Source of the DNA: Lepidodermella squamata
Taxonomy: Eukaryota; Animalia; Gastrotricha
Assembly: GCA_047495785.1 (NCBI GenBank)
Contig: JBLDXI010000011.1
Location: 744,001 to 808,000 of the forward strand
Length of the DNA stretch: 64,000 bases
Direction of reading: 5' to 3'
Shown: in pieces, positions 14,201 to 64,000 of the stretch
How positions within the stretch are numbered: the first letter of the stretch is position 1
Layout: each line of letters starts with the position of its first letter
Translations under genes and position numbers: made by a program
Notes under the pieces: generated by a model
What the model was told of the DNA's origin: nothing
The model's input: the letters and a program-made list of their open reading frames with translations, nothing else
Database searches by the model: none

Positions 14201-14570
14201 GCTAATTATGAATTAATTTTTTCACAACTTTAAAGTTCATTGAAAATAAAGCAATTTTTGATAATATTATGAAACTGGAATCCATTTAATAATTCAGTGC
14301 GTGGGTATTATATCTAATGTTTATTCGCAAAATTGCCAGCGATATGCATCGCAAAAAAACCGGCTTCTATTGTTTTATTAAAAAAAAAGGCCTGAGATGA
14401 TACCGCGCGCGCAGGTAATTTTTGCGCGTAAACATTAATTCTCCTAATTGGTAATTGCGGCGCGAACAAATTAAACCGTTTTATTATCCCCGCCGTTGGT
14501 AGAAAAAAATAAATAGCCGCGATGACAATTGTTCTTTCATTCATTGCCACAAATTGGCTGCGAAAATATA

Positions 14571-37300: not shown

Positions 37301-37586
37301 ATTCGCCCGATTGAACAGCTCCGTTAAACATAACACGGGTTTTTCTCCGCATTTCGGACCGAGTCGCCTTTCGGAAAATTTCTTTAGCCATCTCTTCGGT
37401 GAATCGCCGGCTTAACAGCGAGCTCTCCTCCGCAGTAAGACGGCCGTAATTCAGGCTCGATTTTCCGTTTTTAAGCTCGACGAAAGGGTCTGTAATCACG
37501 GCTACGAAGACCTCTACTGAATCTATGTGATTGTCTGCATTGGCCGCGATAAACAGCGGCACAAGAAAAAATACTTGATAAAACAT
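31311..37586 (-). CDS. Receptor guanylyl cyclase-like protein A, degenerate cyclase domain (exons 37586..36528, 36466..35149, 34701..34161, 34037..33957, 33899..33553, 31786..31311)
   Basis: Signal peptide, extracellular domain, TM, kinase-homology domain (HGQLKPENIL, SPELLR, GDVFSFG), coiled coil, cyclase domain with RIDQNGGSL for KVETIGDAY and RYMLFGEAVEITSRL for [15 protein letters not shown]. Confidence 0.85.
34774..35052. repeat. Degenerate interstitial telomere-like (CCCTAA)n tract in intron of rGC-A
   Basis: Multiple CCCTAA/AACCCT units, with a perfect run at ~34903-34925. Confidence 0.75.
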
Positions 37587-37760
37587 GGCTAAATATGATT
37601 TTCGAGAAATTATGATTTCAGTGTTCAGCCAAGAGGGATCGATGCGCCTCGAGAGCCTAAAAGCTCGGCCTATTGCCGACTGTTTAAAAGCATTTACCGA
37701 TCATCTCACAACATGTTTATTCAGTAAGCAAAAGAGTTCCCGATAATTGCGCGACCTACA

Positions 37761-40700: not shown

Positions 40701-42075
40701 TAGTACCGCAATAGAGATTCGTCACCCTTGGATACTCGCCAGGTATCTGTTGCGAGATCTCGACGGCCCTTGCCACCATCCGCAGTTGCTGATACATCAA
40801 AGCATCGACAGCGACCGCATCTATAGGTCCCACGTTCACAGGCTTGAAAAAACAACACATTAAGGTAATCGAGAGTGATTGTTATTCGAACCTTGTAGTC
40901 AGTGAATTCCAGCCGTTTCTGCCTGAGGACCATCAAGCCATCCGGACCGTATGTGTACAATTGGTCGAAAATACCAGTCAACACGCCCGTGAGGTGAATG
41001 ATCAACAGAAATTTGCCATTAGCCAAAACCTCTTGATTAATCTCATTTATCTGACGCAAAAACTCAGGCAGGTCATGCGTATCGTCCAATATCATGAATG
41101 TAGCCGTTGCTTCCCTTAGCAGTATTTCCTTAGCCTGTTGAGGGCTGCACAGCTTGCCCCGGGCGTAGTAGCGGGTGCAGAAGTAAGATTTGGTGATGAT
41201 AAGATCGCCAAAGTCCATTCGCAACAGGGGTGAGATTTCTTCGATTGCGAGCAGGATTTCCTTGTACATAGCATCAAATGTCGGCCAGTTCGGCGAGAAT
41301 AGGAAATGAAATCTGCGCCATCGGTAGTATCTTGCGAAATAGTAAGCCAGGTGAACTAAACTAACAAGTAAATGTTCTATCAGCGATGAATCTAGAGGCA
41401 CCTACCCAAGCTGTGAGGCTCAAGACCTTCGTATATGAGTTTCGGGCCGATATCCGAAGCCTGAACCGCGTCGCCGTCATTATGGCTGAAACAGCACGAC
41501 GAAAGCGTCGCAGAACTATCCGGCAAAGTCTCTGTGATTTCGTCAAGTTGGACACAACGAGCCGGTGAGCATTCGGCAATATCAATCACTGCGGCGATTT
41601 CAGCGCCTTCATTCTCCGGCGAGGTCAAAGCAGCCTGAATTTGCGCTTCCATGTCCTCGCTGAAGCTTGGCTTGATGAAAATCGGCTTGATAGTTACGTT
41701 CCTTAGATACGCGTAATCTTGCTTGTAAGAATCGCCGTCTATATTCATGAGAGTTCGATCGACCGGGGACATGCTTAAGTAGCTAAGTCTCCGCATTTCA
41801 GGCCGAACAGCGTGATAGAATAGACTTTCGGCCTCTTCATGGGTAAAACGAACAGCTTCGATCAGTTGGTCTGAAACTTGTAATTCTGGGTCGTTCTGGT
41901 GACTTTCTTCGCCAGATTCGTCCAAATCAATATGAACTGCGATAAACACGGTTTTAGCCGGTTCGCGTAGCTTGTTAAGATCATCAGGCAGCGTCAAGTT
42001 AGGATGGTGACTGTGAATTCCTTGCTCACAGATCGATCCCGCAAACGTGACGCTTAGTAAAAAGAGAACTTTCAT
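37761..42075 (-). CDS. Receptor guanylyl cyclase-like protein B, degenerate cyclase domain (exons 42075..41406, 41355..40892, 40842..40692, 40642..39647, 39309..38802, 38748..38668, 38617..38271, 38215..37761)
   Basis: Same architecture as A and C. Cyclase motifs are CASLSGLE (for FSDIVGFT), KIDHNGYGM and RYSLAGDILEVVCLMES. All junctions GT-AG and in phase. Confidence 0.85.
39410..39570. repeat. Interstitial telomere-like (CCCTAA)n tract in intron of rGC-B
   Basis: CCTAA followed by four perfect CCCTAA at 39539-39567, plus degenerate units upstream. Confidence 0.75.
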
Positions 42076-42429
42076 GCTTTTGATGCTTTTGATAAAAAAC
42101 AAGGTGCAATGACGGATGGAATGTTGATTACTCGTGCGATTTTTCAAGTGATTGGATCAATAAGTAGATACTGAAAGGCCAATTGAGTCGGCTGATGATA
42201 TCGAAATAAAAATATCGAATAATTAGCAGAAGATACTCCATTTCAATTGATGTTTGACGCTGCATGCCTGCTCATCGAACTGGAACTTCAAGAGGAGGAA
42301 CGAGATAATTGATCAAATTTTCTCCTTTATGGCGAATAATCGATTGATTTTATTCTTTATTCTTATATGACGAAAATTGATAATTTTTTGCACAAATATA
42401 TGCGGAAAATTGATGGACACTCCTGGCAA

Positions 42430-43040
42430 TTTCAGAATGGCTTCCCTATTAATACTGAACAATTTCTGAACCTGATTGCTTTCGCGGAAGATGGAACTTT
42501 AATAGGCATGAGTCATGAAGAAATTAAATTATTACTGGATGCTTTCAATAAAGCGTGTGCGGAACTAGCTTTGAAAATCAGCATTAGTAAAACCCAATAA
42601 ATGGTGATCGGTGATGATAGCAGCTATCAACTTGAATTAGACGGCAAACTATTGGAAAAAGTCACATCTTTCAAATATTTAGGAAGCATCATTACTTCCG
42701 ATGGGAAAATGGACGAGGAGATCAAGGCACGCATAGCGAAAGCTGGCGGCTGCTTTGGTGCCCTCAATAAACTTATGTGCAATAGGAAACACGTCAGCTT
42801 AGCTACGAAATTGAAAATTCTTAAATGCGTTGTTATTCCTACCGTCACCTATGCTTGCGAAACCTGGAACCTGGCCACCCAACAATAGCAAAGGCTAAAT
42901 GTTATTTTTATGCGCTGGCTCAGAACAATTGCGGGTATGTTTAGAACGGACTATGTTCCTAATGTAGATATTAGACTAATCTGCGACGTAATGGAATTGA
43001 GTAAATTGATTGAAATATTTCGTCTGAAATATCGTCATTT
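42430..43040 (+). mobile_element. Truncated non-LTR retrotransposon (RTE-like LINE) reverse-transcriptase 3' fragment, inactivated
   Basis: LIAFAEDG (degenerate FADD), LKISISKTQ, LEKVTSFKYLGSII, EIKARIAKA..FGAL, TKLKILKCVVIPTVTYACETW; in-frame stops at 42598 and 42886. Confidence 0.85.
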
Positions 43041-46000
43041 TGGCACGGCCGAAAAATCGCCTCATAATTGGCGGATGCGACTTAAGGCATTTAAATATTT
43101 TTTTCGGCCGATACCATCGTGCTGACCTGAGCTTTCTGAATATGTATTTAGACTAGAAATAAGATGAGTCTAACAAGGTGCAAACCGTCAGAGTTTACCT
43201 GCGACCGGACATTTTCTAGTGCGTTATGGCGTGTGGCTGAAAAATGGTGATTTAATTTGTGGGAGCGACCATTTTTTGCTCATTTTTTGCCTTGATCGTA
43301 AATTATCGATTTTCGAGTTTGCGTTAACAGCATTTGAGTGGAGTCTCCATAACGTTATTCCTCTCAAGCCGCAACATGTTGACATCGAACGCTTCAAAAA
43401 GAGTGTGAATGTCCTAGGCTGCACCTCATCACCGTGATAAACACAGCCGAAATTCTTGCGTAAATAAAAAATGCATAGATTTCAGAAGGGCTGTGCAAGC
43501 TTTGCAAGAAGATTGAAGCAACTCCCGTTAGTGAATAGCATGACAAGTTATATTGTTTTAGTTCACTCTATTTAGAGAAACGGCTTCGACAAGAGCCGCT
43601 CTCTGAAAACCTAATGATAAAACAATAGAGCAATTGCTTCGCTTTTGATGTTTGAAAAGTTCATTGTTTCCTTGTTTTTATTTTCAATATCATCCTAACC
43701 CTCTTGATTGAAGCAGACTGAGTAGTCAGAAATTGCGAAAATCACACCAATGTTTCTGGTTACTGTACAATAGCCCTAAGCCCAAAATCACAGTGCTACG
43801 CCATGTCAGCCGGCCACTACTTGTTTTTACGGAATTCGTCAGTTCCGTCAATTCAGGATGACGTTTTGCCTCCGTTTTGTTTACTCCAACATTTTTGCGT
43901 TTTGCTGCTTAAAAAGGCTCCGACTGTTCCGCTCTATTAAAGCTTGAGCTTTCATCGAAAGAACAATAGAATAATGAATTTAAAATGTCATCATTAAAAC
44001 ATACAAAGAACCCCAGATAGTAAAACTATAACGTCAACATTGCATTTTTATTTATCAAAGCAATTATTATTTTTGATAAAAATGTGCATTGTTTTGCTGT
44101 GATCGTCAACACCGCTAAAAATATTTGTGCATGTTTAGCCTGCTTTATGCTCTTCCCGTTCCATATTGCTTCACCAATGTAAAAGCTATGCATATGACCC
44201 GTAAAAGCTCAAACGTGTTTCTGTCCATCACTGGAAAATAAGTGCAAACTGTACTGGTTGGTTGAGAGCTGGTTGTGACATGAAAACATGTGGATGATGT
44301 CTGCTCCTATTCATGTCTCGAAGAAAATTGTTCACTCTGAACGAGATAATTCAAGCTTCAGTCCAGTCACAGCTACAACGGCAGATGGATGTGCGATATA
44401 GCATCCACATCAACTTTTACATCTCTCGACAGTAATGGACTTTTCGTTTTCTTCCCATTTTGAGTCCATTTTGCAATAAAAATGTGAGACTTTGGAAAAA
44501 ACAATACGAGACAAGAGACCGATATGCGGGGTTCGGTGGAAAATAAGATTCAAAAACCAGAGCTTTCAGCTCCGTTTCCACTGCTAACAGAAAACGAATA
44601 CTGTTTTTCGAAAACGGTGTTCTACATAAACAGGCAATACATGTGCGATAGAAATTGGAGAAGTACTCTATACGTTCAATTTTTCCCGGCAATCTTTAAT
44701 CGCCCTGAAATGAGCATTTTTTATTTTCGCGAAATTTAGGATTCGATTGTCCACATTCAACATACAGCCCTCACTTTTCACCGAGTTGGAAAATATCTAA
44801 ATATTAAGCGGGATCGGATTTTCTGGTTTTTCATTTAGCTGGCACATGTACGATATACCTTTTGTTTTGCAGCGGCATTAATGCGTCTCCCGCGTTTATT
44901 TTTGAATCGACCAATGGCGTGCGAGCAAATAATTGTTATGGAAAACTAGCCTTTCACGGCTTTTTAGTGACCGGAGGAAACCAAGCGGATCCGTAAATTA
45001 GCACATTTAGCACAGATCCATGAAATGTGTTCGGCAAACGACAGCCACTGTGCTGGGACACTGTCATATTGGTAAGAGTACGAAGACGTTCTTATGTGAA
45101 AACTTCAACAACTTCAAGCACATTGGCGTTCGTCCTCTGTTAACTGACAAAAAATACGAACTCATTATCGCACAAATGGGATTGTGTACAGATGATGTCT
45201 AAGACGTGTTCATTCTTGAGCAAAAAAATTGTCCGGCAAATGTTTAGATCGTTCGAGATAGTGTATTTCGTACAGGATGCTCTATGATCTATTATTTGGC
45301 TTGCAGACAAAAACAACTGAACAACGAAATAATGACAAAAAGACATGCCCAGTCGGAATTGAATGACACTGTTCTCAAGACAGGCATCTAGCTCCGACTT
45401 CAGGTGTTGAAGATCTACACAGCCACATCGCCTCATCGGTTAGTCTTGAAACGCTGCAACCGTGGCTGACATGAAACATGTTTTCAGACTTGCCGGTTCA
45501 AAAATGATGCCAGACAGAACTATGTTCGTGGACGAAGCCAAAAAAAGAACGCAACATACCAGTTGCGCAAGCAAATTTACAAACGGTTAGGCTTCAGGAC
45601 AATGCAATTTTATAAACAACAAAACATGTTGACGGGAACATTCAAAATTAAGGACTCATTATTATTTTTAATTACAACAAATTTTCAATGCAACAATTTC
45701 ACTTAATAACAGAGCGCACTTTCAGTAATTGGAGCAAGCGTAGTATTGCCACTGAAGCAACATTAAGTTAATCATTTGACTGTGGCGCATATAATAAATG
45801 AAAAGTAATTAAAAATACTGTCTCATTGTTCTATTTCCTTTTGTTGCGAACACCGTTTGTTGCTTAGAAGATTTTCACAATTGAGAGTGTTGCATCAAAG
45901 GAAAGCATTCGACGCGACCCTTTTAATTTGTTTCTGCGATTGCATTCTCGAAGATGTGGCAATAGCGTTGTGGATTCCATGAAGTTACCGTTTCGGTAAA

Positions 46001-46171
46001 AGTCTCCATTTGACGGTGTGTATTTTAAGCGGCGATAGTTTTACCGTAGATGTAATTGCGGCAGTTGCTATTTAACGCAAGCTTTTGTCTTCTTACACAC
46101 TCAGCGAGCGCAATAAACATTCTGCGCCGTGGAGGGATCACTTTGCTTCATCGGATCGATCTAGAATTTTA

Positions 46172-46922
46172 GCACATTTTCTGGCCCGCCGGTGTTTCCT
46201 CCGCGCGCGCGCTCCTATTAGTTGGGGCTTATTGCGCAACATTTCAAGATAATTATAGCCTACCCCCGCTCCCATGCACTCGAGCGCGCCATGAGCGCCC
46301 GTCCGCCAAGTCTAAGACAGTTTGCTAAGTTGAAGACAAGCATGCTGCATGCTCTCCAACAAAAATATAAGCCCACCCTTGAAAAGGATGTTTGGTATTG
46401 TTAATACGACAACAAAATTGACTGCATCGTGGCATACACGACTTTATTTGATGGATCTGTTCGTATCCAAAAACACCGGCCATAAGAATTCAAAAAGGTG
46501 ATTTCAGAGAAAGGATGCGATGGATTTTTTTCGAAGAACACGCTTTTTATGAAAAATTATAAAATTAAAAAAAAAATAAACTGGAAATAGCCATTTTAGG
46601 CGCGCTATTTTAGGCTATTTTAGGGTGATGTTGAACACTTCAGGGAAAAATTCTGTTCAAAGTTAAAATCAACTTGAAATACCAATGAAAAAAGCGAAAA
46701 TACGAAAATTTCGCCTTTTATTCCACCCACCACGCATATCCAACCACTAGCGCGCCGTTATTCTCCTGAATTTTCGACTTGTACATTTTCCTGCGAGCGC
46801 GCGAGGGAGGGCTGCAATTATTTGTTGCGCAATAAATGCGAGCGAGGCGTATTTACGCGTAAAACGAGCCAACCAATAGGAGCGCGCGCACGGAGGAAAC
46901 ACCGGCGGGCCGGAAAATGTGC
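46172..46922. mobile_element. Non-autonomous Mutator-like (MULE) element, 751 bp
   Basis: ~54-bp TIRs GCACATTTTC(T/C)GGCCCGCCGGTGTTTCCTCCG.GCGCGCGCTCCTATT. Exact 9-bp target duplication AGAATTTTA at 46163-46171 and 46923-46931. Confidence 0.85.
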
Positions 46923-47068
46923 AGAATTTTAAGAGGCGAACGAGAAAATTGATCAAATGATCAATTGCTTGTTTTCTCAAGAGGTCAAGACTCAAAACAA
47001 GGAACTTGAAACCCATTTGAATCAAAATTGCTTTTTTATTCTTATCAAAAAAATTTAGAAACTATAAA

Positions 47069-50000
47069 CTATTTAAAGTCATGCTCTGACAGGGGCGCCG
47101 CCAGTGAAAGATCCGGAAGGGGTTTATCAAATCCTATCTTGCCCTTGAGAAAATACGTCAAAATGCAGCCTTTGCCCTTCATCGTCACGTTGCCACGTTC
47201 TTCGAGTTGAAAACCGCCAATTTGATCGAGAAGGGCTTTACATTCAGGGCTGACGTGAATGCGCAGGGCTAGGCCGCTGCTCTCCATTCTAGACGCGTAA
47301 TTCACCGAATCTCCGAATAAGCAGTACCTAGGCATCTTAAGGCCAACCACCCCAGCCACGACAGGCCCGGAATGAATCCCGCATCTTAGTTGCAAAGTTC
47401 GACCGGGCCGATGGGAGATTCGAAAATTCGTCACGCAACTCAAGATATCAAGAGCCATCGACGCTATTTCAGCCGCGTGTTGAATGCCATTTCTGCAGGG
47501 TAACCCGCTCGCAACCATATAAGCATCGCCAATAGTTTCTACCTTGTAGACATCATACGAGTCGATAATATGGTCGAATTGGCTGTACAGATCATTTAGC
47601 AGCTCGACAATCTCCATTGGGCTGGACTCTGAGGCGAGTGATGTGAAGCCGACTATGTCTGAGAAGTAGATCGTCACAGATTCGTAGGTTTCAGGGTGAA
47701 CCACTCGGCCGGCCTTCAACTCGTCTACAACGTATTTCGGCAGCATTTTTGATAGAAGCTCTTCAGATCGCTTCTGTTCCTCGCTCAGCTGCTTCGTCCG
47801 CTCGTTCACGGTTTCTTCGAGGTTTTCGGCGTAGGTCTCGAGCATGCTGATCATTTGATCGACCAAGTTATTCTCTCTAAATTAGATTTCCAGGGTTTCG
47901 GTTCCGTAAAATGATGCAATAACAAAATCTTACCTTCCATTGTTTTTATGTTGCAAATCGCGGAGAATCATGTGAAACGGTGGTCTGGCTACTGGGATCT
48001 CGTTCCAACACGACCTAGGATGGAAACAGGAATAATTCAGAATAAATGGTTAGATACTTATTATCAAAACCTTTATTCTAATAATTGATCAACTTATTTA
48101 TCCCGAACCTTAGTATTGACCTTACAATTAGCTCATACCACACCCCTATCATTTTTCGAACTTCCGCCCCAGTAATTTTACTTTACTAAATCCATCCGCG
48201 TGATTCAGGTCGAAAGCATAAAAAACGGATGTCGAAGAGCTATTCTTGCCGCCGATCATTTGATACTTTAAAAGCACTCACTTGGCAATATTGATCAGGT
48301 CTTGCATCTCCTCGTTGTATTCTTCCGGAATGACGGGTCTTGTGGGTACTTCGCCTGCAGTTCGCAAGTGCTCGACGAGTTCTGTGGAAACATGGAAATT
48401 TCAAGATAAACACGAATCTGTACCAAAACGCCTAAAATAGCTCTTTCTCGATGTTATCATTAGATTTCCTGAGAGTAAAACAAAAACGTATAATCAAACC
48501 TTGGTCGGAAAACGGTGTAGACGCGTAAGGCGGTTGGCGTGTGATAATCTCTGAGATGATAATACCAAACGAATAAATGTCACCAGGTTGTGTTCCGCGT
48601 GGATTTCGCTTCAGTTTAGGCGTTCGTAAAATTTCAGGCGCCATCCATTGAAAAGCTGGCTCAATCTCATTCGGCATAACAGCCACTTGATTAAAGCCTG
48701 TTGTACTGAACACTGATCGATACGTCCCATCGTTCATTAGAGTGGTGCTTTTATGATTAGAGGTATCGAATGTCTCGTCAATCGACCCAATTTTCCGTAG
48801 AAAATAGCCGCCAACGCGAAGAAAAGCTCGTTGAAGAATCGAGATATTTCTCGTTTTTCCTGCAATGGATTTCACGAGAGTTTCAGCTGTTTTGGTGGCT
48901 ATTTTAGCTCCCATCTTCGATTTAGGCCGTTCCGCTAAACTCGCAACCGGAATGTTAGCGATTTTACAAAACCACCTAGCGTCTATCAAAATGTTTTCCG
49001 AGGTTAGCTGGCCATGCGATCTAACAGGGGTTTGATGCAAATACGCCATGCCGCAAGCGATATCGTTGACAAATGACATTTTAAACAGCTTGTTGAGTTT
49101 GACTTTTTTCTGGCTCAGTAAGTTTGCCAAAGTCCCTTTCGTACAGAAAGCATGGACTGAGCAGATTCTTGAGGGGTCAATGGTTAAGCCAAGGAATTGG
49201 TTGACATTGTTATGGTTTAGATCTCGAAGTTGGATCAACTCTTTTACCAGCTTTTGATCGATTCGATGCGTCTTTGAGCAAGTTAGGCGTACAAATACAG
49301 TATCGCCCCGTAACGTCGCTTTTACAAAAGACTTTCCGGTCAAACTGAAGTCCTCAGTAGATTTGCCCCTCTTGAGAGTTGGGATCAGACTTACTAGGGA
49401 ATCGCCTACAGCAGTATGGCCGGATATCTTCTTTGTAACGCCCTCCTGAAAGACGAGATCTGAAAATTTAATAAGGACCAAGGATCTTATAATTTCCTCT
49501 TCCCTCCGCCTCATTTTCTCTCTTCTGATGCTGAGAAAGATGAATGTTGCGATTCCGCCTGAGACTAACAGGAATCCTATTACAGCTGGCGGTACGATTG
49601 GCCGAAGGTCGATTGGTGGTGGAGGGCAGCCAGCTCCGTCCAATATGCAGAAATCTTCAACGGGTGCAATTGTTCCTGATCCTAGCCAGTGGGGTTTTGT
49701 GTGGCTGTAAGAGATCAACTGGCCGTCCCATATGTAGAAAACACGCTCGATGGCGGCAATTTTGGAGGAAGTGTTGCGTTTGACGTTGAGCACTTCGGCT
49801 ACAGCAAAATCTCGATCGCAATGCGGCGCATAACCAACCCAGTCTTTAGTGTCATCAACTGGAAAAAGACGGAAATTAATTTTCGAGCATAAACATTCAC
49901 AAAAATTCAACCGTAACAAAATGAAAGCTAGAGGGAACTACAAACGTGAAAGAAGGAAATCATTGTACCATTTTTGAGGATCAATTTCTGAAATGAATTG

Positions 50001-51180
50001 AGAAATGCTTACAGGTGAACGCTGTGCCGCAAAACATGTCCGATGGTCGTGTGTAATTTTCCGGGTAAAGCTCAAAAATTTCGACTGCCTTCGCCAACAG
50101 TCGCAACTCCGCATACATCAACGCGTCGACCCCCACAGCTTCAACGCCCATCGTCATATGGGGAACAAAATCCGGAAACCGCATCCGTTTCTGGCTCAAC
50201 AGCATCATCCCATCCGGCGCTTCTAACATCAGCCGTTCAACAATAGGAGACATAACTCCGGTTAAATGGATCAGAAATATCGCCTTCCCATTCAACAGGC
50301 GGCTGTCATCTTTACTGATTTCGTTGATTTGGCGAATGAACACTGGCATATCGTGCTCGGTCTCAAGTAACAGGAAAATCGCCGTGGCTTGTCGTAGAAC
50401 CAACTCCTTAGCATGATTCGCACTGCATACATTACCCTTAGCTAGATAAGTCGTGCAAAAGTACGATTTCGAGATTATCAACTTCTTCCCACCATCCTCG
50501 ACTAGATTTTCAGAGACCTCCTCGAATATTTCGCTCAAATCTTGATAGAACGTATCGAAAGTTGGCCAATTTGGGGAGAAAACGAAATGAAACCGCCGCC
50601 AGTTGTAAGTTCTGGCAAGATATGCTGTTAAATGGACTAGGCTATGGGGTTCCAAGGATTCGTAGACCAAGCTCGGTCCAGCTTGGGAAGCAGCGATTTC
50701 TTCCTCTGAATGGCTGTCGAAGCAACAAGTCGATAATATCGCTACATTTTTCTCTAACATCCCGCTCAAATCTAAAAGTTGCTCGCATCGTTTCGGCGAA
50801 CAGGTTGCTACATCAAGAAGAGCAGCCACCCGCCCCTCTGCTTTTTTCAGTTGTTCCATCATAACAAGGCTATGCTCCGCCGTGAAAAATAGCGGTTTTA
50901 TGTCGACTTGAGAATAATTTAGTGTTAGATTTAGCGAATCTTTATGAGTGAAAACGCTGTGTTGATCCTTGTAGACTGCAATACGGGTTTTTCGTCTATT
51001 CTGAGCTGAAACTGCTGAGTTGAAGGTTTCAATGGCTTTCTCTAGGTTCCAGCTGGATTTGTTGCTTCCAACAGGCCATTCGTCGGTTATAACGGCGATG
51101 TAAGCAGTCTTGATCTGAATGATTAAACTGGATTCAGCAGATGCGAATCCAATCGTGGAGAGGAGAAGTAGGAAGAGCAT
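47069..51180 (-). CDS. Receptor guanylyl cyclase C, catalytically intact, NPR1/speract-receptor-like (exons 51180..50013, 49858..48500, 48381..48282, 48014..47934, 47876..47069)
   Basis: Signal peptide, ECD, TM, kinase-homology domain; canonical [64 protein letters not shown]. Confidence 0.93.
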
Positions 51181-51420
51181 GAGATATTCTCTATTTATTG
51201 TCTAGTAAAAAAGGTGTTGAAGTTAAACTGATGAATTTCACAGAAATGTACTCATTACAAGTTCTGAACTTAAAATGGACGAAATTGCTTTCAAGTTGAT
51301 TGATAAAAATCGAAAAAACAACAAACAATAAACTTAAAAACTACAGAATCGATCGATATTTTTAAAAAGTGTTTAGGTTTTCCGTCTCGAGCGCTGTTCT
51401 TCAGTTCAGCCGACAAAGTA

Positions 51421-54834: not shown

Positions 54835-55800
54835 GGATTTTCGTGGATGATGCTGGTATTTTGTGAGACCATCGTATGCCATAGCCCTTCATTAACAGTT
54901 TGCCTGAGATTCCCTTTTTTTGTTGGCTAGTTTTTTCGAAAAAACGAGTTTTTTGAGGGAAAATCTGACTTGGCTTGATGTTAGCAACCGTCGTTGAGCG
55001 GCTGATTAATTAGTATTTCATCTTGAGATGAACATTATTTCATGGTGCAAGGATGAGAGGCACTGAATCGAACAATTAACGCCGAGATGACATAGTTCCA
55101 ATCGATGACGTATTCTCCTCCTCAAAAATTATTGAAATTCAAGTTTTCCAGTAATTAATAATGAATTGGTGTAATACGTTAATTTCGTGGATGATGATGG
55201 CATTTTTTTGCTGAAAATCGAAGTCGAGAACCAAACCATTGATTATGTTGGGTGAAAAATAAATTCTTGTGGCTAGCTTATTTACAGCTGTCACATAATT
55301 CTAAGAAACAGGAAACATGTTTACACATTCGACGACATTTTCTGTTCATTAGGAAAAATGTAGCCAGCAATTGTTAATGTTCAACCCTTAGTACCATTCG
55401 ACAGGTCCTTCGCACTGATATTCAGTGGAAAAATGTAGTAGTCATCCACGAAATCACTAAGCTACACCGATTCCAATTTGAATACTGAAAATCTTACCTT
55501 GCTGTCTTAATTCACAGGAGAACATGAACCATAGGTTAAAACCATGTCATTTTCTCGTCGATTGTTCTCTTCAGTGCCTGTCATCTCTTCAATAGAGTGA
55601 ATTTTCATTCAAAGATGAAATAGTAATAAACTAGTGGCTGAAAGACGAAACCGAACTTCATGTCTAGTCAAAATTTCCCTATAAAATCTCGATTTAAGAA
55701 AAACCCAGCCTGTAAAATCGAGAAATTCTTTATAAACTAGTTAAACCAGACCCTAACCATTCAGGATTCTAAATAAAATAATTAAATCATCCTCGAAATT
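54835..55800. repeat. Decayed ~1-kb palindrome (foldback) centred on AAACATGTTT at 55313-55322
   Basis: Arm pairs with constant coordinate sum ~110636: 54840/55790 (CGTGGATGAT/ATCATCCTCG), 55015/55615, 55060/55575, 55185/55445. Confidence 0.6.
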
Positions 55801-56010
55801 AAACAGATATTAATTGAAAACCCCGCAAATCTGGCTAAAAGTCAAAATTTTCATGCAAATTCTCGTTTTGAGAAAAAAGCAGCCAGTGAAATCTAGCAAT
55901 TTTTCTTAAACCAGTTGAACCAAACCCTAACAATTCAGAATTCTAAAAAAAGTAATTATGTCATCCTCGAATTTAAAAAGATGTTAAATGAAAATCGCGC
56001 CAAATTGGCT
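55724..56010. repeat. Two-copy direct repeat, ~175-bp period
   Basis: AAC(T/C)AGTT.AACCA.ACCCTAAC.ATTCAG.ATTCTAAA...TCATCCTCGAA at ~55734 and ~55909. Confidence 0.7.
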
Positions 56011-57090
56011 GTGGCTCCAATATTACACGATGAAAACGATATCGTAGAACTCATGTGTGCGCAACAAAGCGCTTTATATAACGTGCCTTACGGCGGAGTA
56101 TAGAAGAAAAACACGCAATTTCCGCTGATTGCTGCTGTATACATCCCATTATAAAGCGGCGTTACGGTTTTTATCGCGTTTTCACATCATTTTTCTACAA
56201 AATCACTCATTACTTACGGATTTCATTAACATATTTCACGGCGAAATTTTGTTTTCAGCTAAAAAAATCAAATTTTTGAATTTTCGAGCAAATTAAGGAA
56301 GTAGTCGGAAAATCGGCAATGTGCTATTCTAGGGACTGATGCGCATTTTTCTCATCAATTTCTGATTTCACTAAAAGTTTCAAACCCACTATTTTTCAAT
56401 GAAATTACAGAAAAACATGGCTAGTCAATTGGACCCCGCCGGACAGGCCTGTAATGTCAGATAGAGTCCAACTGAAGCGCATTGTAATAATGTCGGTTTT
56501 TTGTGGCGGGAACATCGCGAGAATACGCGGATGAATCAAATGACGACGTGGGCTTGCTAGTCATTTATCGACGATGATGTGACTGGCGATTACTTCAAGC
56601 CATTAGTGGACGTTGTTGCAGCGGGGAGAGTGGGAGAGTCGCGAAAACGAGTACACGATGCAATACTTGCACTCGATACTCGATACTCCGTACGCCGTAC
56701 TCGATTTACTCATCTTCACTCGTCTCCGACTCGTTCCGATTCGTAAATCTCGACCGGCTCCGTTCAGAGATGAACTTTTTACTCATGTTATACATTATAG
56801 GCCGGGTTTCGTAAGGTCAAAGTCCAAAGCATGATTCACGCTATTGAAATAATGCAGCTGGTTGTTAAAATAATTTTTCAAATTCTCCAGATTCTCCAGA
56901 TTATTGAAAAGTATCTTGAGAATGCTGGCTTATTTTTTATAGTGGAATTTCTAAAATAGTTTGAAAAATCTGAAAAATTTGAAAAATAAGGCTACACAGG
57001 AAACGTTACAGAGTAGTGCTATTTTTAAACGTCACGCGCTATATTTAGAGATGTACTTTGACCCTGCAAACCCGGCCCACAATGTACCTT

Positions 57091-57538
57091 AAAATATCGA
57101 ATTGGCTCGGCCTATATTTTTGAGGACAATTCTATATTTGTATGGTATAACATTCGTAAATCGTTTATATCTGAACTCGCCGCACTCGATTTACTCATCT
57201 CAACTCGCCTCCGGCTCGTTTCGATTCGTAAATCTCGGCCGGCTCCGTTCAGATATGAACTTTTTACTCATGTTATACCATACAAATATTGCATGAGCAC
57301 ATCTGCTAACACTTTATTTTTAAAACGAATGCTATATTTGTATGGTATGACATGAGTAAAACGTTTATATCTGTACGGAGCCGCCCGAGATTTACGAGTC
57401 GTGACGAGCCGGAGGCGAGTTACGAAGAGTAAATCGAGTGCGGCGAGTTCAGATATGAACGATTTACGAATGTTATACCGTAAAATATCGAATTGTCAAA
57501 GCAACTCGACCTATATTTTTGACGACAATTCTATATTT
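57091..57538. repeat. Inverted pair of ~155-bp MITE-like units (57134-57289, 57334-57488) flanked by ~50-bp direct repeats; third partial copy at ~56690-56793
   Basis: Each unit has TIR ATATTTGTATGGTAT(A/G)ACAT, and unit 2 is the reverse complement of unit 1. AAAATATCGAATTG..CTCG.CCTATATTTTTGA.GACAATTCTATATTT occurs at 57091 and 57482. Confidence 0.75.
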
Positions 57539-58740
57539 CCTAATAACGCTATCAACAAGATTTCTCGAATTTGAATCTTAAACGACCAAATCGACAGAAC
57601 CGACAGTTCACTGAGAAGACCAAAAGATTGAGATTGGGAGTTGCGCACGTTAGAGAATAAATGGTTTGCAAGAAAACAGGTTTGGTTATTCGAAAACGTA
57701 GCTCAGCTGACAAAATGCAAGTGCAAGTTGGGTTGTTCAGTCTAACTCACTTTGCAGTCGCTCGAAGCTTTGCAAACAGCTTGTCCGAAAATAAAAATTC
57801 AAACACCAAACGAATTGTAATGGCCGCTATGTCTTCGCTACCTCTAGAACTGGCACTAGACATAACTGTACTTACTGTGTTTGTGCGAAATTGGGGGAAA
57901 TTCTAATCTTTTTCATTATGAAGAAAATCGAGAAGAATTGCATAACATGGATTGAATATTTGGGTTCAGCGTATCACGTTGAGCTAGGTTGCACAGTTCA
58001 GCGCGACTACGAATAAAATGCGCAATAAATTGGTAGAATAAATCGTACAATTGTTAGTGCGCATGCGTGTGTGTTTGTGTGGTGTGTGTTGCTGCGCGCT
58101 CACAGCCTCTTGTCTCTTTAAGCCAAGTTCGTGCGATCAGTGAATCATTCATCCTATAAGCGCGCGCATCGGTTCGCCTACGAGAACTGAGTCCTAAAAC
58201 TTGAAATAATTTCTGATTCATATTAACGCGAGCACACGCCACTTTACATGCCAACTGCCAAATCAACAGATTTTCTTTGTTAACATATTCTTTTTTCTCT
58301 AAATCAAGATTTTGACGAGAAAATTCAAACTTGAAAACTATTTTCAATTTTTACGGTGGATGATGCAGAACATTTTATGAGACTACCTAAAAGCCAAAAT
58401 TGCAACCCAGCCTTCTCGATTAAAATCATTGTTCCCCTGCCTTGGTACCAGTCTTTCAGATTTCTTGAATCAAGAAATTGTATACCACGTTAGGAGGATA
58501 GGGGCACACTACAGCGGGTCCACGAATTACGTGCTGTTTGAGCGTAAAAATTAGCATTATAAGACTTACAAAGACATTTACATCCGCCGCTGCTTAATTC
58601 ACCTATTTTAGCTAAATATCGAGAATAAAAGCATTTTTTTTCTAGCAACATTTTCATTTTGTTCATATAAGAGCACCTTTTTTCCTCACTTTTTTCACTT
58701 TTCCTATTTTTCTCATTTGTTAACTTTCATATTTTCTAAT

Positions 58741-59702
58741 ATGAATGAATGCTCCTCAAAATCATTCAATTTTGACATCGGATCCCCTAACTTTGCTGAT
58801 ATTTTTAATTCCAACTCTACGTCCTCGCCATCATCACCAACCAGACACGAGCTACCGCCTCCGTCCGCAGTCAAAGGCAAACCCGCTTCTCGAAAGAGCA
58901 TAATTAATCAATCAATTAAGAAAAAGTCGAAGGCATCTGTAATAGTTAAACCTAATCTGAAGCCACAAGACAGTTTCATTGCCATCTGTTTCACACCCAA
59001 CATCAACACGTCTCTATGCGAGGCGATTGATAAATGTCTCAACATTGCTGGTTCTGTCTGTTCCAGACACAATTTCCAGACTCCTGGCATTATTTTTCTT
59101 CACCAGAGCACAAAGACATCACCACCGTCGCTCTCCCCGGCAATGCCGTCATCGACATAAAGCTCGAACTGGTCAATACAATAACAATTTGTTCCCTTCA
59201 AACTAAGTTAGACCTAAAACAGCTATGCTACCTACTTAAAAACTGTGAATATAAGCCGAAAAAAATGACTTCAGCTCTCTTTATAAGAGTCAAAAATCCA
59301 CTAATAACGCTTATGCTATATTCGTCCGGCACCCTCATATGTACAGGTGCCCGGTCGCTTGCTATAGCCAGAAAAGCTATTCGAAAAATTGCGCGAAAAA
59401 TTCTAATAGCTGGTTATCCAGTCAAACTCTCAAGTATTAAAATAAAAAATTTGGTCTTTACTGGAAAGCTTCCATTTCAGACTAATCTAAGTCATATTGC
59501 TGCCGCACACTCTAATTTCCTAATATATCATCCAGAGAAATTTCCCGCCTTAAGAACTCGCCCTCTTCAATGTAATGCCAAACATTCCCTCTCAATTCTT
59601 CTTTTTCATACCAACAAAATTATCATCACTGGTGTTCACAGCTTTGGAACAACAGCGTCATTGATTAAAGCATTTATCGCGTTATTTCTATTAAAAAAAT
59701 AA
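58741..59702 (+). CDS. Divergent TATA-binding protein (TBP-like) (exons 58741..59050, 59107..59702)
   Basis: Both TBP repeats present: LVNTITICSLQTKLDLKQL..NCEYKPKK..IRVKNP..LMLYSSGTLICTGARS..ARKAIRKIARKI..GYPVK..KIKNLVFT..YHPEKFPAL..LLFHTNKIIITG. A 56-nt GT-AG intron joins the two ORF-track frames. TATAAG at ~58666. Confidence 0.88.
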
Positions 59703-59816
59703 TTTAGGTAGGAAAAAAATAGCCCAGACAGCACGCGATCTCGATTAATGCCTTGCCTGCTTTCTAACAAAATCAAACTCAGTCTTCATATAATTTTCTG
59801 CGTCGATCAGTCAACC

Positions 59817-60157
59817 ATGCATCTTTCAACTGAGCGTAATTACAAATATTTTGCTCATTTTTCATCTAATTCCCATTGTTTTTTTTCACAGGTCTTCAAA
59901 TTGTTCTACTTTCCTGCTGCCTACTCTCGGCTATTATCGACGTCTCACTGCAAGTATACAACTTCAGCGTCAATAGTACTACTACTCAAGCTGTCACCGA
60001 ACTTGCCCAAGTCATCCATGCATTTCACCAATTAAGTATGGGGAAAATTATCGAGCTTGAAAGCCACAATGTATTTTTATTGAATAACCTGTTTGGCTTT
60101 ATGATGAACTGCTCTGCCCTACCTTGCCATACCGTTCGGAGAAATAAAAATACCTAA
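59817..60157 (+). CDS. Small hydrophobic (secreted/membrane) protein (exons 59817..59835, 59892..; 3' end uncertain)
   Basis: ATG micro-exon and 56-nt GT-AG intron give MHLSTERLQIVLLSCCLLSAIIDVSLQVYNFSVNST... Confidence 0.4.
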
Positions 60158-60170
60158 TTTCTGCCTTTGA

Positions 60171-60855
60171 TCAATTTATTATTTTTTCAAGCAATAACTT
60201 CATATCAATTTGTTCCTTATCGGTTTCAGACAACATTATTTTACTCCCAGCTGAAAAATCGTCAAAAAATTGGTCAAAACTTTTATCCATAGCAGCTAAG
60301 TGCTCCATATCTATCGAAGTCTCACCATCTCTCCCACGCATCTGGATCCTTTGTTGCAAAATCGACAATGGGGCCTTCAAAAACAACATTCTCGACGGCT
60401 TTGGTGCCCACTCATCTAACGGCGTGTAGATACAACGCAGCATATTCAGTTCCGTATCCGTCAAATAACCGCTGAATAAAATAATGAAAATTGATATTTT
60501 TCCTAATTTACTCAAGACCATACCGCGAATATGCCAACTTCACAAAGACGTGAGGGGATGTAAGCCAACAGCGATCACTGACTACGACAATATTTCGCTC
60601 CAAACGGCCAATCTCGACGGTTTGCCTAGCCATGGCTCCATGAACTAAACATTGTAGGTCGAATGCGTACCGATGTGGATCTTTATAATATGCAGCCAAT
60701 AGATCACCTCGCTGCTGCCATTCTTTAACCGGTTCTTCAAAATAACGAATTTCACGGCCATTAAACTGCTCCCCAATCTCCCTTTGCATGCGACTTAAAA
60801 GCCAACTTTTACCTACGCCAACACAGCCGTCGATGAAACACCACACTCGAGACAT
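60171..60855 (-). CDS. Deoxynucleoside kinase (dNK family) (exons 60855..60524, 60471..60171)
   Basis: IDGCVGVGKS P-loop, EEPVKEW, YYKDPHRYAFDLQ, SDRC, lid RIQMRGRDGE; 52-nt GT-AG intron. Confidence 0.9.
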
Positions 60856-61216
60856 TCGTTTGAAAAAATTGAAAATATTGAAAATATATAAAAAATGAAA
60901 AATACAACCTGGACCTACTGCTGTTAAATCACCAAGTTAATGACTAAGCAGGTGGTTTACTTGTTTACAATAACAATAATCTCATCAACTCTGTTAAGTT
61001 TAATGACAGTTATTAAGCACTACAGAGCTATAAACAATCCTAAGTTACATTCAAAATAGCGGTCAGACTTGTCGAAATGCCTCCGAGCTATTAGGCTCCA
61101 GGCCATTTTTCACCTGTAATACGAGACTGACCATCTCATTTTAGCCTATCACAGCCCTATTTAAAGATCAAATTATTTCATTTTTTTATTCAATTTTTGT
61201 TTAAATCTTTATTAAA

Positions 61217-62122
61217 ATGAACACTCTTTCCAAAATGCACTGCATTGTAGCTTCGTTCGGGTCGTCATATGCCATAAATTTTCGGCCGCCCGGCACGATA
61301 TGGATAAACAACCGCGTGTCCCAACATCGCCATTTCACAGCAGATGCTAAAGATTTTCTGGCTGCGCTCAAGCTCCACTTCATCGAAGACACAGAGTGGA
61401 TCGGGCAGCTTGAAATCGCCATCGCGGATCCAAGCTACGAGTTTCCCGAACGTCATTTGATAGCTGAATTAGTCCGACTCTCCATACAACGAGCACCAGC
61501 TCTTCCAGCCAGAGTCGCCATCCGTTATTTCACTCGCCCTTACGGCTGTAAATTTAAATTATATATTAGTACTTAAAATTTTCTATTCAATGAAATCTTA
61601 GCTAATACGGGCGTCAGCTATCCTACAGTTAATGGCATTCTTATAGACGCAGCATCATTCCGACATCTATATACCGAGGTTTTGCCCGGCTTCATTCGAG
61701 ACGTAGACAGCCAGCTAGAAATTCTCCAGAGCACTATGACACCAGGGAACAAGAAAAATGCAACGACCCTCACTAAAAAGAAAGCACCATCCAACGCTAT
61801 TAAAAAAGCAGCAGTCCCCTCCACTCCAACGAGTTCTCTGGTCAAAAAGAAGAGCCTCAAAAAATCTACTACCAAGGAACAATCGCCCAAACTACTCATG
61901 ATAGCCTCAGCTGCCAGCGACAGTCGATATGAATCAACGCAACAAAGTCTTCAAAAATCTGAGGTTCAATCCCCTATAGTGATCCCACCTGCCAAACAAC
62001 CGTCTAAGAAAATGGAAGAAGAGGAAGAGGCGTCAGATAACAGCGAGCCCGAGCCTGAAATGGAGGAAGATGACGAGGATGGGTACCAAGTGGATGAAGA
62101 CGAGGTCATTCTCATCGAATGA
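61217..62122 (+). CDS. Protein with PC4/Sub1-like ssDNA-binding motif, basic linker and acidic tail (exons 61217..61547, 61602..62122)
   Basis: A 54-nt intron joins the frames to give VAIRYFTRPYGSNTGVSYPTVNGILIDAASFRHL, compared with the PC4 pattern VDIREYW...KPGRKGISL...W..L. Lys-rich middle; Glu/Asp-rich C-terminus. Confidence 0.6.
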
Positions 62123-62262
62123 CGTCACATCAGCAATAAGACTACAATAACTATAATATTTAATATTGAAAGATCAAGTTTTTTCCCCCTATATAGTTTT
62201 TTCTTGCTCTCTCAATATACAAGTCTAATAATAATAAATTTTATTCTCAATTTTTTTCTTAG

Positions 62263-64000
62263 GAGAATTGATCCCTCTCCGCTTTACTTTTCAATTGTTC
62301 GGGCTAATCAACGCGTCCTTGCTCCGAAATTTCAAATATATGGTCAAATTTTTGAGCTACACTTCCTTAATCACCTGCTCGACGAAAATTTCCAAGACCC
62401 GCCTCAGCTAGGTGCTGGTCGGCCTGGTAGTTGGCGAAATCGAGCAACCCCAGAAAATGCCGATGATGAATTTCCGGAGCCAAACAACTCGTCTACCCTC
62501 CTGCATACATTCACAATTCCAAGCGCGAAGCGCGGTGAGATCGAATCTGAAGACGTAGAACAGCGATTTCGCCGCGTAGTTATCATGCTAATTGATATAG
62601 CCGACAAGCTTCGACTCCAAATTAATCAACACGTATCTATCAATCCTAAGAAGGAGCGCATCTTTGTCAAACTACGAATTGAACACCCTCAACTCCACAG
62701 GTTCTCTTTTCTAGCTTGTCTTCCAATTGATTACTAGCTTTCTATTTAAGAGCGATCTGCCTGCCGTTTCACCCGATCCAAAAGTTGACAGATGAGCGGA
62801 TCTACTCATTTATCGAGCGAATTCTTAATAGTCAAGAAAATCTCCTCCTAGAGGGTCACTGGTTCATCGAAGCTGTAGTATGTCGAGTCCCAACAACCAG
62901 CGCCGAAAACGACAGTAGCGACGGCTCAAACCCTACCAAGAGCATAAAAGTTTCAGGGAAACGCCGTCGAGATGTGACCAAGCGACCAACCGTTCCTGAA
63001 ATTATCGACAAACACCTCAGTAACTTTCGCTCAGTCATTCAGATTAACAATACGGAAGACCACCGCTGTCTACCTCGTGCACTGATGCTCGGTGCTGCTA
63101 GATTGCTCTATATGGCAAACAAGGCTGATCGCCAGCTTAAAAAATACTACGACCAAATCAGAGATCCCAGGCAATCATTACAAAGCCAAGCCGCAATACA
63201 GCTTCTACTAACGGCAAAGTTACCTGTAAACCAAGCTGGATACAATTTAGGCAGCGACCTGACCAGCCTTCGTCAAGCCTTGGAACTTTTACACAATCGC
63301 GATTTTAAAGTCATAGTTTACAGCAGCTCCGTTCAAAGAGTTACGACCACCGACCCAGCATCTTCACCAAATGACCCGACTCCACGGGAAAGTATCTATC
63401 TGCTAGTGACAGGCGATAATCATATTCATCTCCTAAGCAACCTCGCTTCAATCATTGGGACTCGGTTTTTCTGTCAAAGCTGCTATCAAGGGCTGAGTCG
63501 GCGAGATCAGGCACATGCTTGTGAATTCGCTTGTGATAAGTGTCTCCAACCTGATGCGAACTGCAGTCGCCTCCCCCAACAATGGCGACGATGCTCCGAA
63601 TGCCATCGAAACTACTACAACCCAACGTGCTACAATAATCACAAGGTCAATCACCGATGTCAGCCCAAGCAACGCTGTGTCAACTGCTCACGGCTATTCA
63701 TCGATCTGACCAAACACAAAAACTGCAAAGGTCGGCGATGTAGAATCTGTCACTCTATCCTAGCCACTGCTCAGAACCTCCCAGTCGGTCAATCTCTCCC
63801 AAGGCATCAATGCTATATGCAAGTTGCGCCACTCGTAGATCGCACTTCATATAAAAATATCATTGTTTTCGACTTTGAAACTCGAGTTGAAGAAGCAAGC
63901 TGTCGGCTAATTCCTAACCTCTGTGTTGCCTTCAAATGCTGTCCCGGATGTATGAATGAAGAACCAATAATCCAATCGGAAAACTGTACGACGTCCTGTG
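62263..64000 (+). CDS. Polinton/Maverick protein-primed DNA polymerase B, N-terminal part (exons 62263..62700, 62751..>64000; start exon uncertain)
   Basis: Frame is open from 62751 to the window end: FIERILNSQE (terminal-protein-like region), SVIQINNTEDHRCLPRAL...IYLLVTGDNHIH (OTU-like), FCQSC..HAC..CDKC..CSECHR..C..H..CVNC..CRIC..HQCYMQ Cys-rich region, then ExoI IVFDFET..IPNLCVA. 50-nt intron 62701-62750. Confidence 0.88.

What the first reader, a model, noticed from the sequence alone, without database searches (positions are those of the whole stretch)
58700..64000. Polinton/Maverick-like element apparently carrying its own transcription-initiation kit (TBP + PC4-like) plus dNK
Seen: TBP-like, dNK, PC4-like and pPolB genes packed within ~5.3 kb. 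Established: Polintons have pPolB, integrase, packaging ATPase, protease and capsids, and normally rely on host Pol II factors; viral TBPs are a hallmark of large nucleocytoviruses. Inference: a mid-sized integrating DNA virus has captured a TBP and pairs it with a PC4-type coactivator/ssDNA binder to drive its own promoters or reprogramme host transcription, with dNK supplying nucleotides. I do not know of this gene combination being described, but could not search.
Basis: partly seen in the sequence, partly recalled or inferred. Interest (0 to 1): 0.92.

Follow-up and report, generated by a model that had tools for sequence, protein, structure and literature searches.

The report
Virus-like gene block with its own TBP
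The last 5.9 kb of the window is a compositionally foreign, gene-dense block in an animal genome that really does encode a divergent TATA-binding protein and a deoxynucleoside kinase.

Summary
Confirmed: an intact two-repeat TBP-like ORF (59034-59702, +; Pfam TBP E=5.7e-30) and a deoxynucleoside kinase gene (60171-60855, -; both pieces above Pfam's cut-off).

Not confirmed: the 'PC4-like' gene (61217-62122, +) has no PC4 match in Pfam, PDB, PHROGs or NCBIfam when searched piece by piece. The 'pPolB' is an open frame that runs off the window. It has no profile, PDB or homologue hit. Only motif-level features (Cys/His pair, Cys-rich stretch, a D-x-E motif) fit the published TP-vOTU-exonuclease N-terminus of polinton polymerases.

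New evidence: from about 58.1 kb to the window end the + strand is C-rich (GC skew -0.20, against -0.009 +/- 0.033 elsewhere). This holds at third codon positions, in spacers and across the opposite-strand dNK. All four genes therefore sit in one unit that differs from the host flank.

The host is an animal (Cys-loop anion channel, receptor guanylate cyclases). I therefore fetched neither the rest of the element nor other copies.

A TBP gene in a mid-size linear dsDNA virus with an adintovirus-like PolB is already in a published figure legend. Verdict: probably the accessory arm of a Polinton-like element. The 'transcription kit' reading is only half supported.

The parts
58099..64000 (.). Compositionally distinct block, C-rich on the + strand. 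It is cut by the window end. The left edge is estimated, with a support interval of 58079-58581.
   Evidence: GC skew is -0.20 over 58251-64000, against a mean of -0.009, sd 0.033 and minimum -0.088 for all other 5.5-kb windows. A two-segment change point falls at 58099 with a log-likelihood gain of 31.5. The asymmetry is present at third codon positions of the + strand genes, mirrored in the minus-strand dNK, and present in three spacers. Host ORFs are near zero.
59034..59702 (+). TBP-like gene: an intact 222-codon ORF with a two-repeat TBP core from about residue 43 to the end. An overlapping upstream ORF in another frame (from about 58.74 kb) might be a 5' exon. This was not resolved.
   Evidence: Pfam TBP E=5.7e-30. 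PDB TBPs at about 5e-27, aligned over residues 30-202. NCBIfam TBP models at 6e-27, all below their cut-offs. No relative above 40% identity among 1.84 billion cluster representatives. 21 of 30 columns that are at least 90% conserved in 139 TBPs are kept.
60171..60855 (-). Deoxynucleoside kinase gene, read in two pieces with one interruption. The stretch between the pieces is short and bounded by GT and AG, so it is probably a small intron rather than damage.
   Evidence: Pfam dNK at 56.6 and 34.1 bits (cut-off 27), with abutting profile ranges. PHROG 761 at 4.4e-06. Only weak PDB matches to dGK/dNK, E about 0.006-0.009. A P-loop G-x-x-G-x-G-K-S and an Arg-rich lid are visible in the translation.
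61217..62122 (+). It has an N-terminal region predicted as mostly beta, a Lys/Ser/Thr/Pro-rich middle and a strongly acidic tail. It has one in-frame stop, inside a short GT..AG-bounded stretch that may be an intron.
   Evidence: Translations. No PC4 or other family match. The AlphaFold single-sequence model of the first piece has pLDDT 38.0 and is unusable.
62200..64000 (+). Polymerase-like gene region, whose true start is unknown, running off the window. It is two long open stretches in different frames: one change of frame, which may be an intron or a frameshift.
   Evidence: Translation. It shows a Cys ... His pair of OTU type, a Cys-rich stretch, then a hydrophobic strand with D-x-E about 40 residues before the window end. 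No match in Pfam, NCBIfam or the protein search, and only chance-level ones (E>=0.009) in PDB and PHROGs. The AlphaFold model has pLDDT 34.8. The order fits the TP-vOTU-exonuclease N-terminus described for polinton pPolB (PMC11071308; PMC11071296).
61157..61165 (+). TATA-like box (TATTTAA type), about 55 nt upstream of the start codon of the 61217 gene. Two more copies lie on the + strand at 62157 and 62743, and none on the - strand of the block.
   Evidence: Not significant on its own: the 9-mer has 3 matches in the window against 2.2 expected.
60856..61216 (.). Divergent spacer between dNK and the 61217 gene. It holds a 9-bp tandem array and a TATATA box about 35 nt upstream of the dNK start.
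   Evidence: Tandem repeat at 60860-60902, period 9, 4.9 copies. Sequence.

Best explanation
The block from about 58.1 kb to the window end is the terminal, accessory-gene arm of a Polinton/Maverick-type (adintovirus-like) virus-like element integrated in an animal genome. Reading inward from the edge it carries a divergent TBP paralogue, a divergent deoxynucleoside kinase on the other strand, a basic/acidic protein of unknown fold, and then the start of a large polymerase gene. Shown: the TBP and dNK identities, the common foreign composition of the whole block, and the position of its left edge upstream of the TBP gene. Inferred: the TBP-like protein keeps the saddle and the second-repeat phenylalanine pair but has lost the first-repeat pair. 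It therefore probably binds DNA and general factors with altered specificity. It may seed Pol II initiation on the element's own TATTTAA-type promoters, or it may compete with host TBP. Inferred: the dNK salvages deoxynucleosides for the element's DNA synthesis in non-dividing cells. Inferred: if the third protein binds nucleic acid at all, a role as single-strand-binding helper of protein-primed strand-displacement replication, next to the polymerase gene, is at least as likely as a PC4-type coactivator. Two of the interruptions sit in short GT..AG-bounded stretches (for the polymerase-like region's change of frame this was not settled), and host genes in the window also have very short gaps between exons. 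The genes are therefore probably expressed in the nucleus through the host's splicing machinery.
For: TBP. dNK. One unit: GC skew is six standard deviations from the rest of the window, it is independent of gene orientation and codon position, and the change point at 58099 (58079-58581) lies upstream of the first gene. Both cellular-type genes are far from any cellular homologue, as is usual for viral captures. TBP is at most 40% identical to anything in 1.84 billion representatives, and its top hits are ordinary plant and animal TBPs with no lineage preference. dNK reaches only E about 0.006 against solved dNK/dGK. The polymerase-like frame has the order Cys..His, Cys-rich, D-x-E, which matches the published TP-vOTU-Exo layout. 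Precedent for a TBP gene in such viruses. Gene density jumps at the block.
Against: No tool recognised the polymerase, the OTU domain or PC4. Both structure models were unusable. No integrase, packaging ATPase, protease, capsid gene or terminal repeat lies in the window, and no second copy does either. Co-occurrence of TBP with pPolB in other copies was not tested. Introns would also fit host genes. The direction of the skew (C and A rich on the + strand) is not what simple single-strand deamination of a displaced strand would give, so its cause is unexplained.
Confidence: 0.55

Rival explanations
1. The block is part of another kind of integrated or horizontally acquired DNA. Candidates are a fragment of a larger DNA virus, or a mid-size linear dsDNA virus that is not a Polinton in the strict sense. 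On this reading the long open frame at the window end is not a protein-primed polymerase.
For: TBP-like proteins and nucleoside kinases are typical of large DNA viruses (own knowledge). The polymerase call has no tool support. The foreign composition says 'foreign unit', not 'Polinton'.
Against: Short spliceosomal-type interruptions in two, perhaps three, genes point to nuclear expression, which is unusual for cytoplasmic large DNA viruses. The Cys..His, Cys-rich, D-x-E order fits the polinton pPolB N-terminus.
Confidence: 0.2
2. TBP-like, dNK and the third gene are host genes (a fast-evolving TBP paralogue and neighbours) that merely lie next to an element whose left end is to the right of them.
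For: The genes appear to have host-type short introns. The TBP hits are all cellular TBPs. Animals are known to have TBP paralogues (own knowledge).
Against: The strand asymmetry starts upstream of the TBP gene and runs unchanged through all genes and spacers into the polymerase-like frame. Eight host ORFs in the window show none. Neither protein has a close cellular relative.
Confidence: 0.15
3. The block is a decaying remnant. The interruptions are real damage, not introns, and none of the genes works any more.
For: Three of the four genes cannot be read in one frame from start to stop. No transcript evidence is available.
Against: The TBP ORF is intact. The two dNK pieces meet exactly in the Pfam profile (98/98), with GT..AG borders between them. 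Open stretches of 204 and 423 codons are far longer than anything in the 7 kb of flanking non-coding DNA.
Confidence: 0.1

Closest known systems
Polintons/Mavericks and adintoviruses of animals (Polintoviricetes)
   Same: A virus-like unit integrated in an animal genome. It has a large polymerase-like gene whose N-terminus has the order expected for TP, OTU-like protease, then exonuclease (PMC11071308, PMC11071296). Accessory genes sit at a terminal arm.
   Different: None of the hallmark genes could be verified here. TBP-like and dNK genes are not among the accessory genes listed for animal adintoviruses in the papers read.
MELD viruses with adintovirus-like PolB that carry a 'TBP' gene (Starrett et al. 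2021, Fig. 5 legend, PMC8502044)
   Same: A mid-size linear dsDNA virus-like genome that combines an adinto-type PolB with a gene similar to TATA-binding proteins.
   Different: Those genomes came from non-animal datasets. The figure itself is not held, so which virus carries the gene and how similar it is could not be checked. No dNK is listed there.
TBP-like proteins of large DNA viruses (Nucleocytoviricota)
   Same: A virus-borne, strongly divergent two-repeat TBP fold (own knowledge for the viral side).
   Different: Those viruses bring their own RNA polymerase. A Polinton-size element would have to work with host Pol II. No viral TBP was among the named top hits: 7 of the 10 best were named, all cellular.
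Cellular TBP paralogues (TRF/TLF-type factors)
   Same: A TBP core with some DNA-contacting phenylalanines replaced, as in paralogues with changed promoter preference (own knowledge).
   Different: It sits inside a compositionally foreign block. It has no close relative in the libraries. Its best hits are canonical TBPs, not a paralogue family.
PC4/Sub1 family (Pfam PF02229)
   Different: No profile or PDB match, piece by piece. The joined form was not searched.

Membership tests
TBP (Pfam PF00352) | Two tandem TBP repeats scoring above the curated cut-off | tested here: met
   103.4 bits against a cut-off of 22.9, two stretches. Aligned to human and other TBP cores over both repeats.
TBP (Pfam PF00352) | Two phenylalanine pairs that kink the TATA box (own knowledge of canonical TBP) | tested here: inconclusive
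   Both Phe positions of repeat 1 are replaced (Met, Tyr) and both of repeat 2 are kept. 21 of 30 near-invariant columns are kept.
Deoxynucleoside kinase (Pfam PF01712) | Profile match above the cut-off over the whole domain | tested here: met
   Two pieces at 56.6 and 34.1 bits (cut-off 27), covering profile positions 3-98 and 98-182 of 203.
Deoxynucleoside kinase (Pfam PF01712) | P-loop and Arg-rich lid | tested here: met
   G-x-x-G-x-G-K-S near the N-terminus and an R-x-x-x-R-x-R stretch in the second piece are seen in the translations. That these are the catalytic motifs is own knowledge.
PC4/Sub1 (Pfam PF02229) | Profile match to the ssDNA-binding domain | tested here: not met
   No match at E<=1 for the pieces or at E<=10 for sub-pieces, and none in PDB at E<=10. 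Tested exon by exon only.
PC4/Sub1 (Pfam PF02229) | Four-stranded sheet plus helix fold | tested here: inconclusive
   The single-sequence model has pLDDT 38.0. No fold search was run on it.
Polinton/Maverick | Protein-primed family B polymerase (exonuclease and palm with TPR1/TPR2) | tested here: inconclusive
   Only about 40 residues past a D-x-E motif lie in the window. No match in Pfam, NCBIfam or the protein search, and only chance-level ones in PDB.
Polinton/Maverick | OTU-like protease domain N-terminal to the polymerase | tested here: inconclusive
   A Cys and a His in suitable contexts and order are seen in the translation. There is no Pfam OTU match, and the model is unusable.
Polinton/Maverick | Retrovirus-like integrase, packaging ATPase, adenain-like protease, major and minor jelly-roll capsid proteins | not testable with these tools
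   None lies in 58.1-64.0 kb, and the element is cut by the window end. Fetching the rest was left out (host is an animal).
Polinton/Maverick | Terminal inverted repeats and 6-bp target-site duplication | not testable with these tools
   The right end is outside the window. Self-comparison finds no partner for the left part of the block.

The most novel reading that the evidence does not exclude
An animal Maverick/adintovirus-like element carries, in its terminal arm, its own divergent TBP and its own deoxynucleoside kinase. Both are expressed through host-type short introns. The element's DNA bears a strong strand asymmetry, independent of gene orientation, that records how it is (or was) replicated.
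Probability: 0.4. Interest if true: 0.7.

Novelty: new variant of a known kind. Interest (0 to 1): 0.5.

Why it matters
Polinton-size elements are thought to depend wholly on host Pol II factors. If one in an animal carries its own TBP, even 15-40 kb nuclear virus-like elements tamper with promoter recognition, a trait usually linked to giant viruses. A dNK would add nucleotide salvage to their known repertoire. The strand asymmetry offers a way, from sequence alone, to map element boundaries and possibly replication direction. If instead the block is ordinary host DNA, or the polymerase call is wrong, the finding shrinks to a fast-evolving TBP paralogue.

Tried and rejected
1. Word-indexed homologue searches with the TBP ORF and with the 423-codon frame found nothing. 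The third and last search went to a host kinase-homology exon to place the host. Its best hits were animal ANP-receptor-type cyclases at 26-36% identity.
2. The full HMMER scan with TBP gave 3303 hits but none closer than 40% identity. The named top hits are ordinary TBPs.
3. Single-sequence AlphaFold models of the polymerase-like frame and of the first piece of the 'PC4-like' gene had pLDDT 34.8 and 38.0. I therefore ran no fold search, since matches would be meaningless.
4. PHROGs and NCBIfam added nothing beyond TBP and the kinase.
5. Rfam and tRNA scans did not help to place the host.
6. The bacterial promoter/terminator scan was at chance level.
7. A shared promoter motif: three TATTTAA boxes lie on the + strand, which is suggestive but not significant.
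8. A second copy or a terminal repeat partner inside the window: none found.
9. Rejected: a bacterial or phage origin (introns, eukaryotic TBP) and a human origin (long exons, gene content).
Full report
**What is in the sequence**

Region 58.7-64.0 kb holds four gene-like units after about 7 kb without any open stretch of 100 codons.

- **TBP-like gene.** An intact 222-codon ORF at 59034-59702 (+) matches Pfam TBP at E=5.7e-30 with two stretches. It aligns to solved TBP cores over both repeats at about 5e-27.
- **dNK gene.** A deoxynucleoside kinase gene lies on the minus strand at 60171-60855. It is read in two pieces, both above Pfam's cut-off, and their profile ranges abut exactly (3-98 and 98-182). 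The short stretch between the pieces starts with GT and ends with AG (sequence). I therefore read the single interruption as a small intron, not damage.
The gene at 61217-62122 (+) has a beta-rich N-terminal part, a Lys/Ser/Thr/Pro-rich middle and a very acidic tail. It carries one in-frame stop, again inside a short GT..AG-bounded stretch.
- **Polymerase-like region.** From about 62.2 kb to the window end there are two long open stretches in different frames, so one change of frame. The second stretch, of 423 codons, runs off the window.

**The two calls that hold**

The TBP-like protein is a real but strongly divergent TBP.
- A full HMMER scan of 1.84 billion cluster representatives gave 3303 hits, none above 40% identity.
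- Seven of the ten best hits carry names, and all are ordinary TBPs of plants, a mite, a sea cucumber and a fish, with no lineage preference.
- In an alignment with 139 of these hits, the query keeps 21 of the 30 columns that are at least 90% conserved. It averages 31% identity to the others, while they average 48% among themselves.
- Both phenylalanine positions of the first repeat are replaced (Met, Tyr) and both of the second repeat are kept. That these are the DNA-kinking residues is my own knowledge of canonical TBP.

The dNK is also divergent. Its best solved relatives reach only E about 0.006-0.009. It keeps a P-loop and an Arg-rich lid.

**The two calls that do not hold**

No PC4 match was found for the third gene:
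- Pfam at E<=1 for the pieces and E<=10 for sub-pieces;
- PDB at E<=10;
- PHROGs and NCBIfam.

The joined (spliced) form of this gene, of the dNK and of the polymerase-like gene was not built or searched. If a domain straddles an interruption, this test would miss it. The single-sequence AlphaFold model of the first piece was unusable (pLDDT 38.0).

The polymerase call has no tool support either:
- no match in Pfam or NCBIfam, and only chance-level ones in PDB and PHROGs;
- no homologue within the length range the word-indexed search can see;
- an unusable model (pLDDT 34.8).

What the translation shows is a Cys and later a His in OTU-like contexts, a Cys-rich stretch, and a hydrophobic strand with D-x-E about 40 residues before the window ends. 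This order fits the published architecture of polinton pPolBs: terminal-protein domain, vOTU-like protease, then exonuclease and polymerase (PMC11071308). [quoted passage not shown] That is a resemblance, not a test.

**New evidence that the four genes form one foreign unit**

- Over 58251-64000 the + strand has a GC skew of -0.20. All other 5.5-kb windows average -0.009 (sd 0.033, minimum -0.088).
- The asymmetry holds at third codon positions of the + strand genes (-0.14 to -0.39).
- It is mirrored in the minus-strand dNK (+0.17 and +0.64 on its coding strand).
- It holds in three spacers (-0.17 to -0.24).
- Eight host ORFs lie between -0.12 and +0.05.
- A two-segment change-point fit puts the left edge at 58099, with support 58079-58581 and a log-likelihood gain of 31.5. 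That is upstream of the TBP gene.

The cause of the asymmetry is unexplained. Its sign is not what simple deamination of a displaced single strand at a left end would give (inference).

**The host**

The flank encodes:
- an NB-ARC/NACHT-ankyrin protein and several receptor-type guanylate cyclases with kinase-homology domains;
- histidine acid phosphatases;
- pieces of a Cys-loop anion channel, whose best solved relatives are glycine, GABA-A and GluCl receptors at 2e-21 and below.

The best homologues of a cyclase exon are cnidarian and mollusc ANP-type receptors at 26-36% identity. The host is therefore an animal, not human, with long exons and very short introns. The species was not identified. 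No protein of the window found itself in either protein library, so the source genome seems not to be in them.

Because the host is an animal, the element counts as a virus-like element of animals. I therefore did not:
- extend the contig;
- look up encoding contigs for the element's proteins;
- scan the viral or metagenome collections with them;
- fetch any Maverick, adintovirus or adenovirus comparator.

As a result, the hallmark genes, the terminal repeats, the copy number and the co-occurrence of TBP with pPolB remain untested.

**How it most likely works**

This section is inference, except where marked.
- The block is the terminal accessory arm of a Polinton/adintovirus-like element.
- The TBP-like protein keeps the saddle (shown) but has an altered first repeat (shown). 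It may nucleate Pol II initiation on the element's own promoters, or it may compete with host TBP for general factors.
- TATA-like boxes lie upstream of the third gene, in the dNK spacer and ahead of the polymerase-like region. Their number is not beyond chance.
- The dNK would feed the element's DNA synthesis.
- The third protein lies next to the polymerase gene. If it binds nucleic acid, it is as likely to be a single-strand-binding replication helper as a PC4-type coactivator.
- The short GT..AG stretches suggest nuclear expression with host splicing.

**What is known**

[quoted passage not shown] 5 of Starrett et al. 2021 for MELD viruses with adintovirus-like PolB from non-animal datasets (PMC8502044). 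A TBP in such a virus is therefore not unprecedented.
- I found no paper that links Polintons or Mavericks with a deoxynucleoside or thymidine kinase as a cargo gene, or with PC4. This is a text search of open papers only.

- I also recalled short motif fragments of OTU proteases, kinases and polinton polymerases. None was entered into a tool or used as evidence.
- In my reasoning I worked out candidate intron bounds around the interruptions.
- I have not repeated those places here and have deleted nothing.

**Verdict**

The best reading, at about 0.55, is an accessory arm of a Polinton-like element carrying a divergent TBP and a dNK. That would be a new variant of a known kind, of moderate interest until the rest of the element is seen.

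Noticed in passing
window 58099-64000: There is a strong strand asymmetry, independent of gene orientation (+ strand C-rich and slightly A-rich). It is present at third codon positions and in spacers, and absent from host DNA. Its cause is unknown, and its sign is not what simple displaced-strand deamination would give.
   Followed up: partly
window 31314-51201 (- strand): A tandem cluster of at least three or four receptor-type guanylate cyclase genes (kinase-homology domain, HNOBA linker, cyclase domain) with long exons and very short gaps between them.
   Followed up: partly
window 20845-24137 (+): A large NB-ARC/NACHT NTPase fused to many ankyrin repeats, in two long open stretches. This is an NLR-like architecture in an animal genome.
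   Followed up: no
window 27743-29109 (-): Pieces of a Cys-loop anion-channel subunit (GlyR/GABA-A/GluCl-like). A 95-nt tRNA-Arg(TCT) call lies at 29215-29309, just beside it.
   Followed up: partly
window 54925-57540: A repeat-rich, ORF-free stretch just left of the block. It holds a 174-bp tandem repeat (55666-56010), about 100-bp units in direct and inverted orientation (56693-56793, 57178-57278, 57345-57445) and a long imperfect inverted pair (54925-55219 / 55417-55710). No skew is seen there, and any relation to the element is unknown.
   Followed up: no
window 58058-58100: A GT-rich low-complexity run sits exactly at the estimated left edge of the compositional block.
   Followed up: no
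window 62000-62122 (+): The third gene ends in a long acidic run followed by a short hydrophobic V/I/L stretch. This resembles a SUMO-interaction-type motif (own knowledge) and was not tested.
   Followed up: no
window 59703-60170: The convergent spacer between TBP and dNK holds two overlapping unassigned ORFs of about 95 codons with no family match. AATAAA signals for both flanking genes lie at its right end.
   Followed up: partly
window 12519-17791 (+): Histidine acid phosphatase (His_Phos_2) exons, possibly two neighbouring genes.
   Followed up: no
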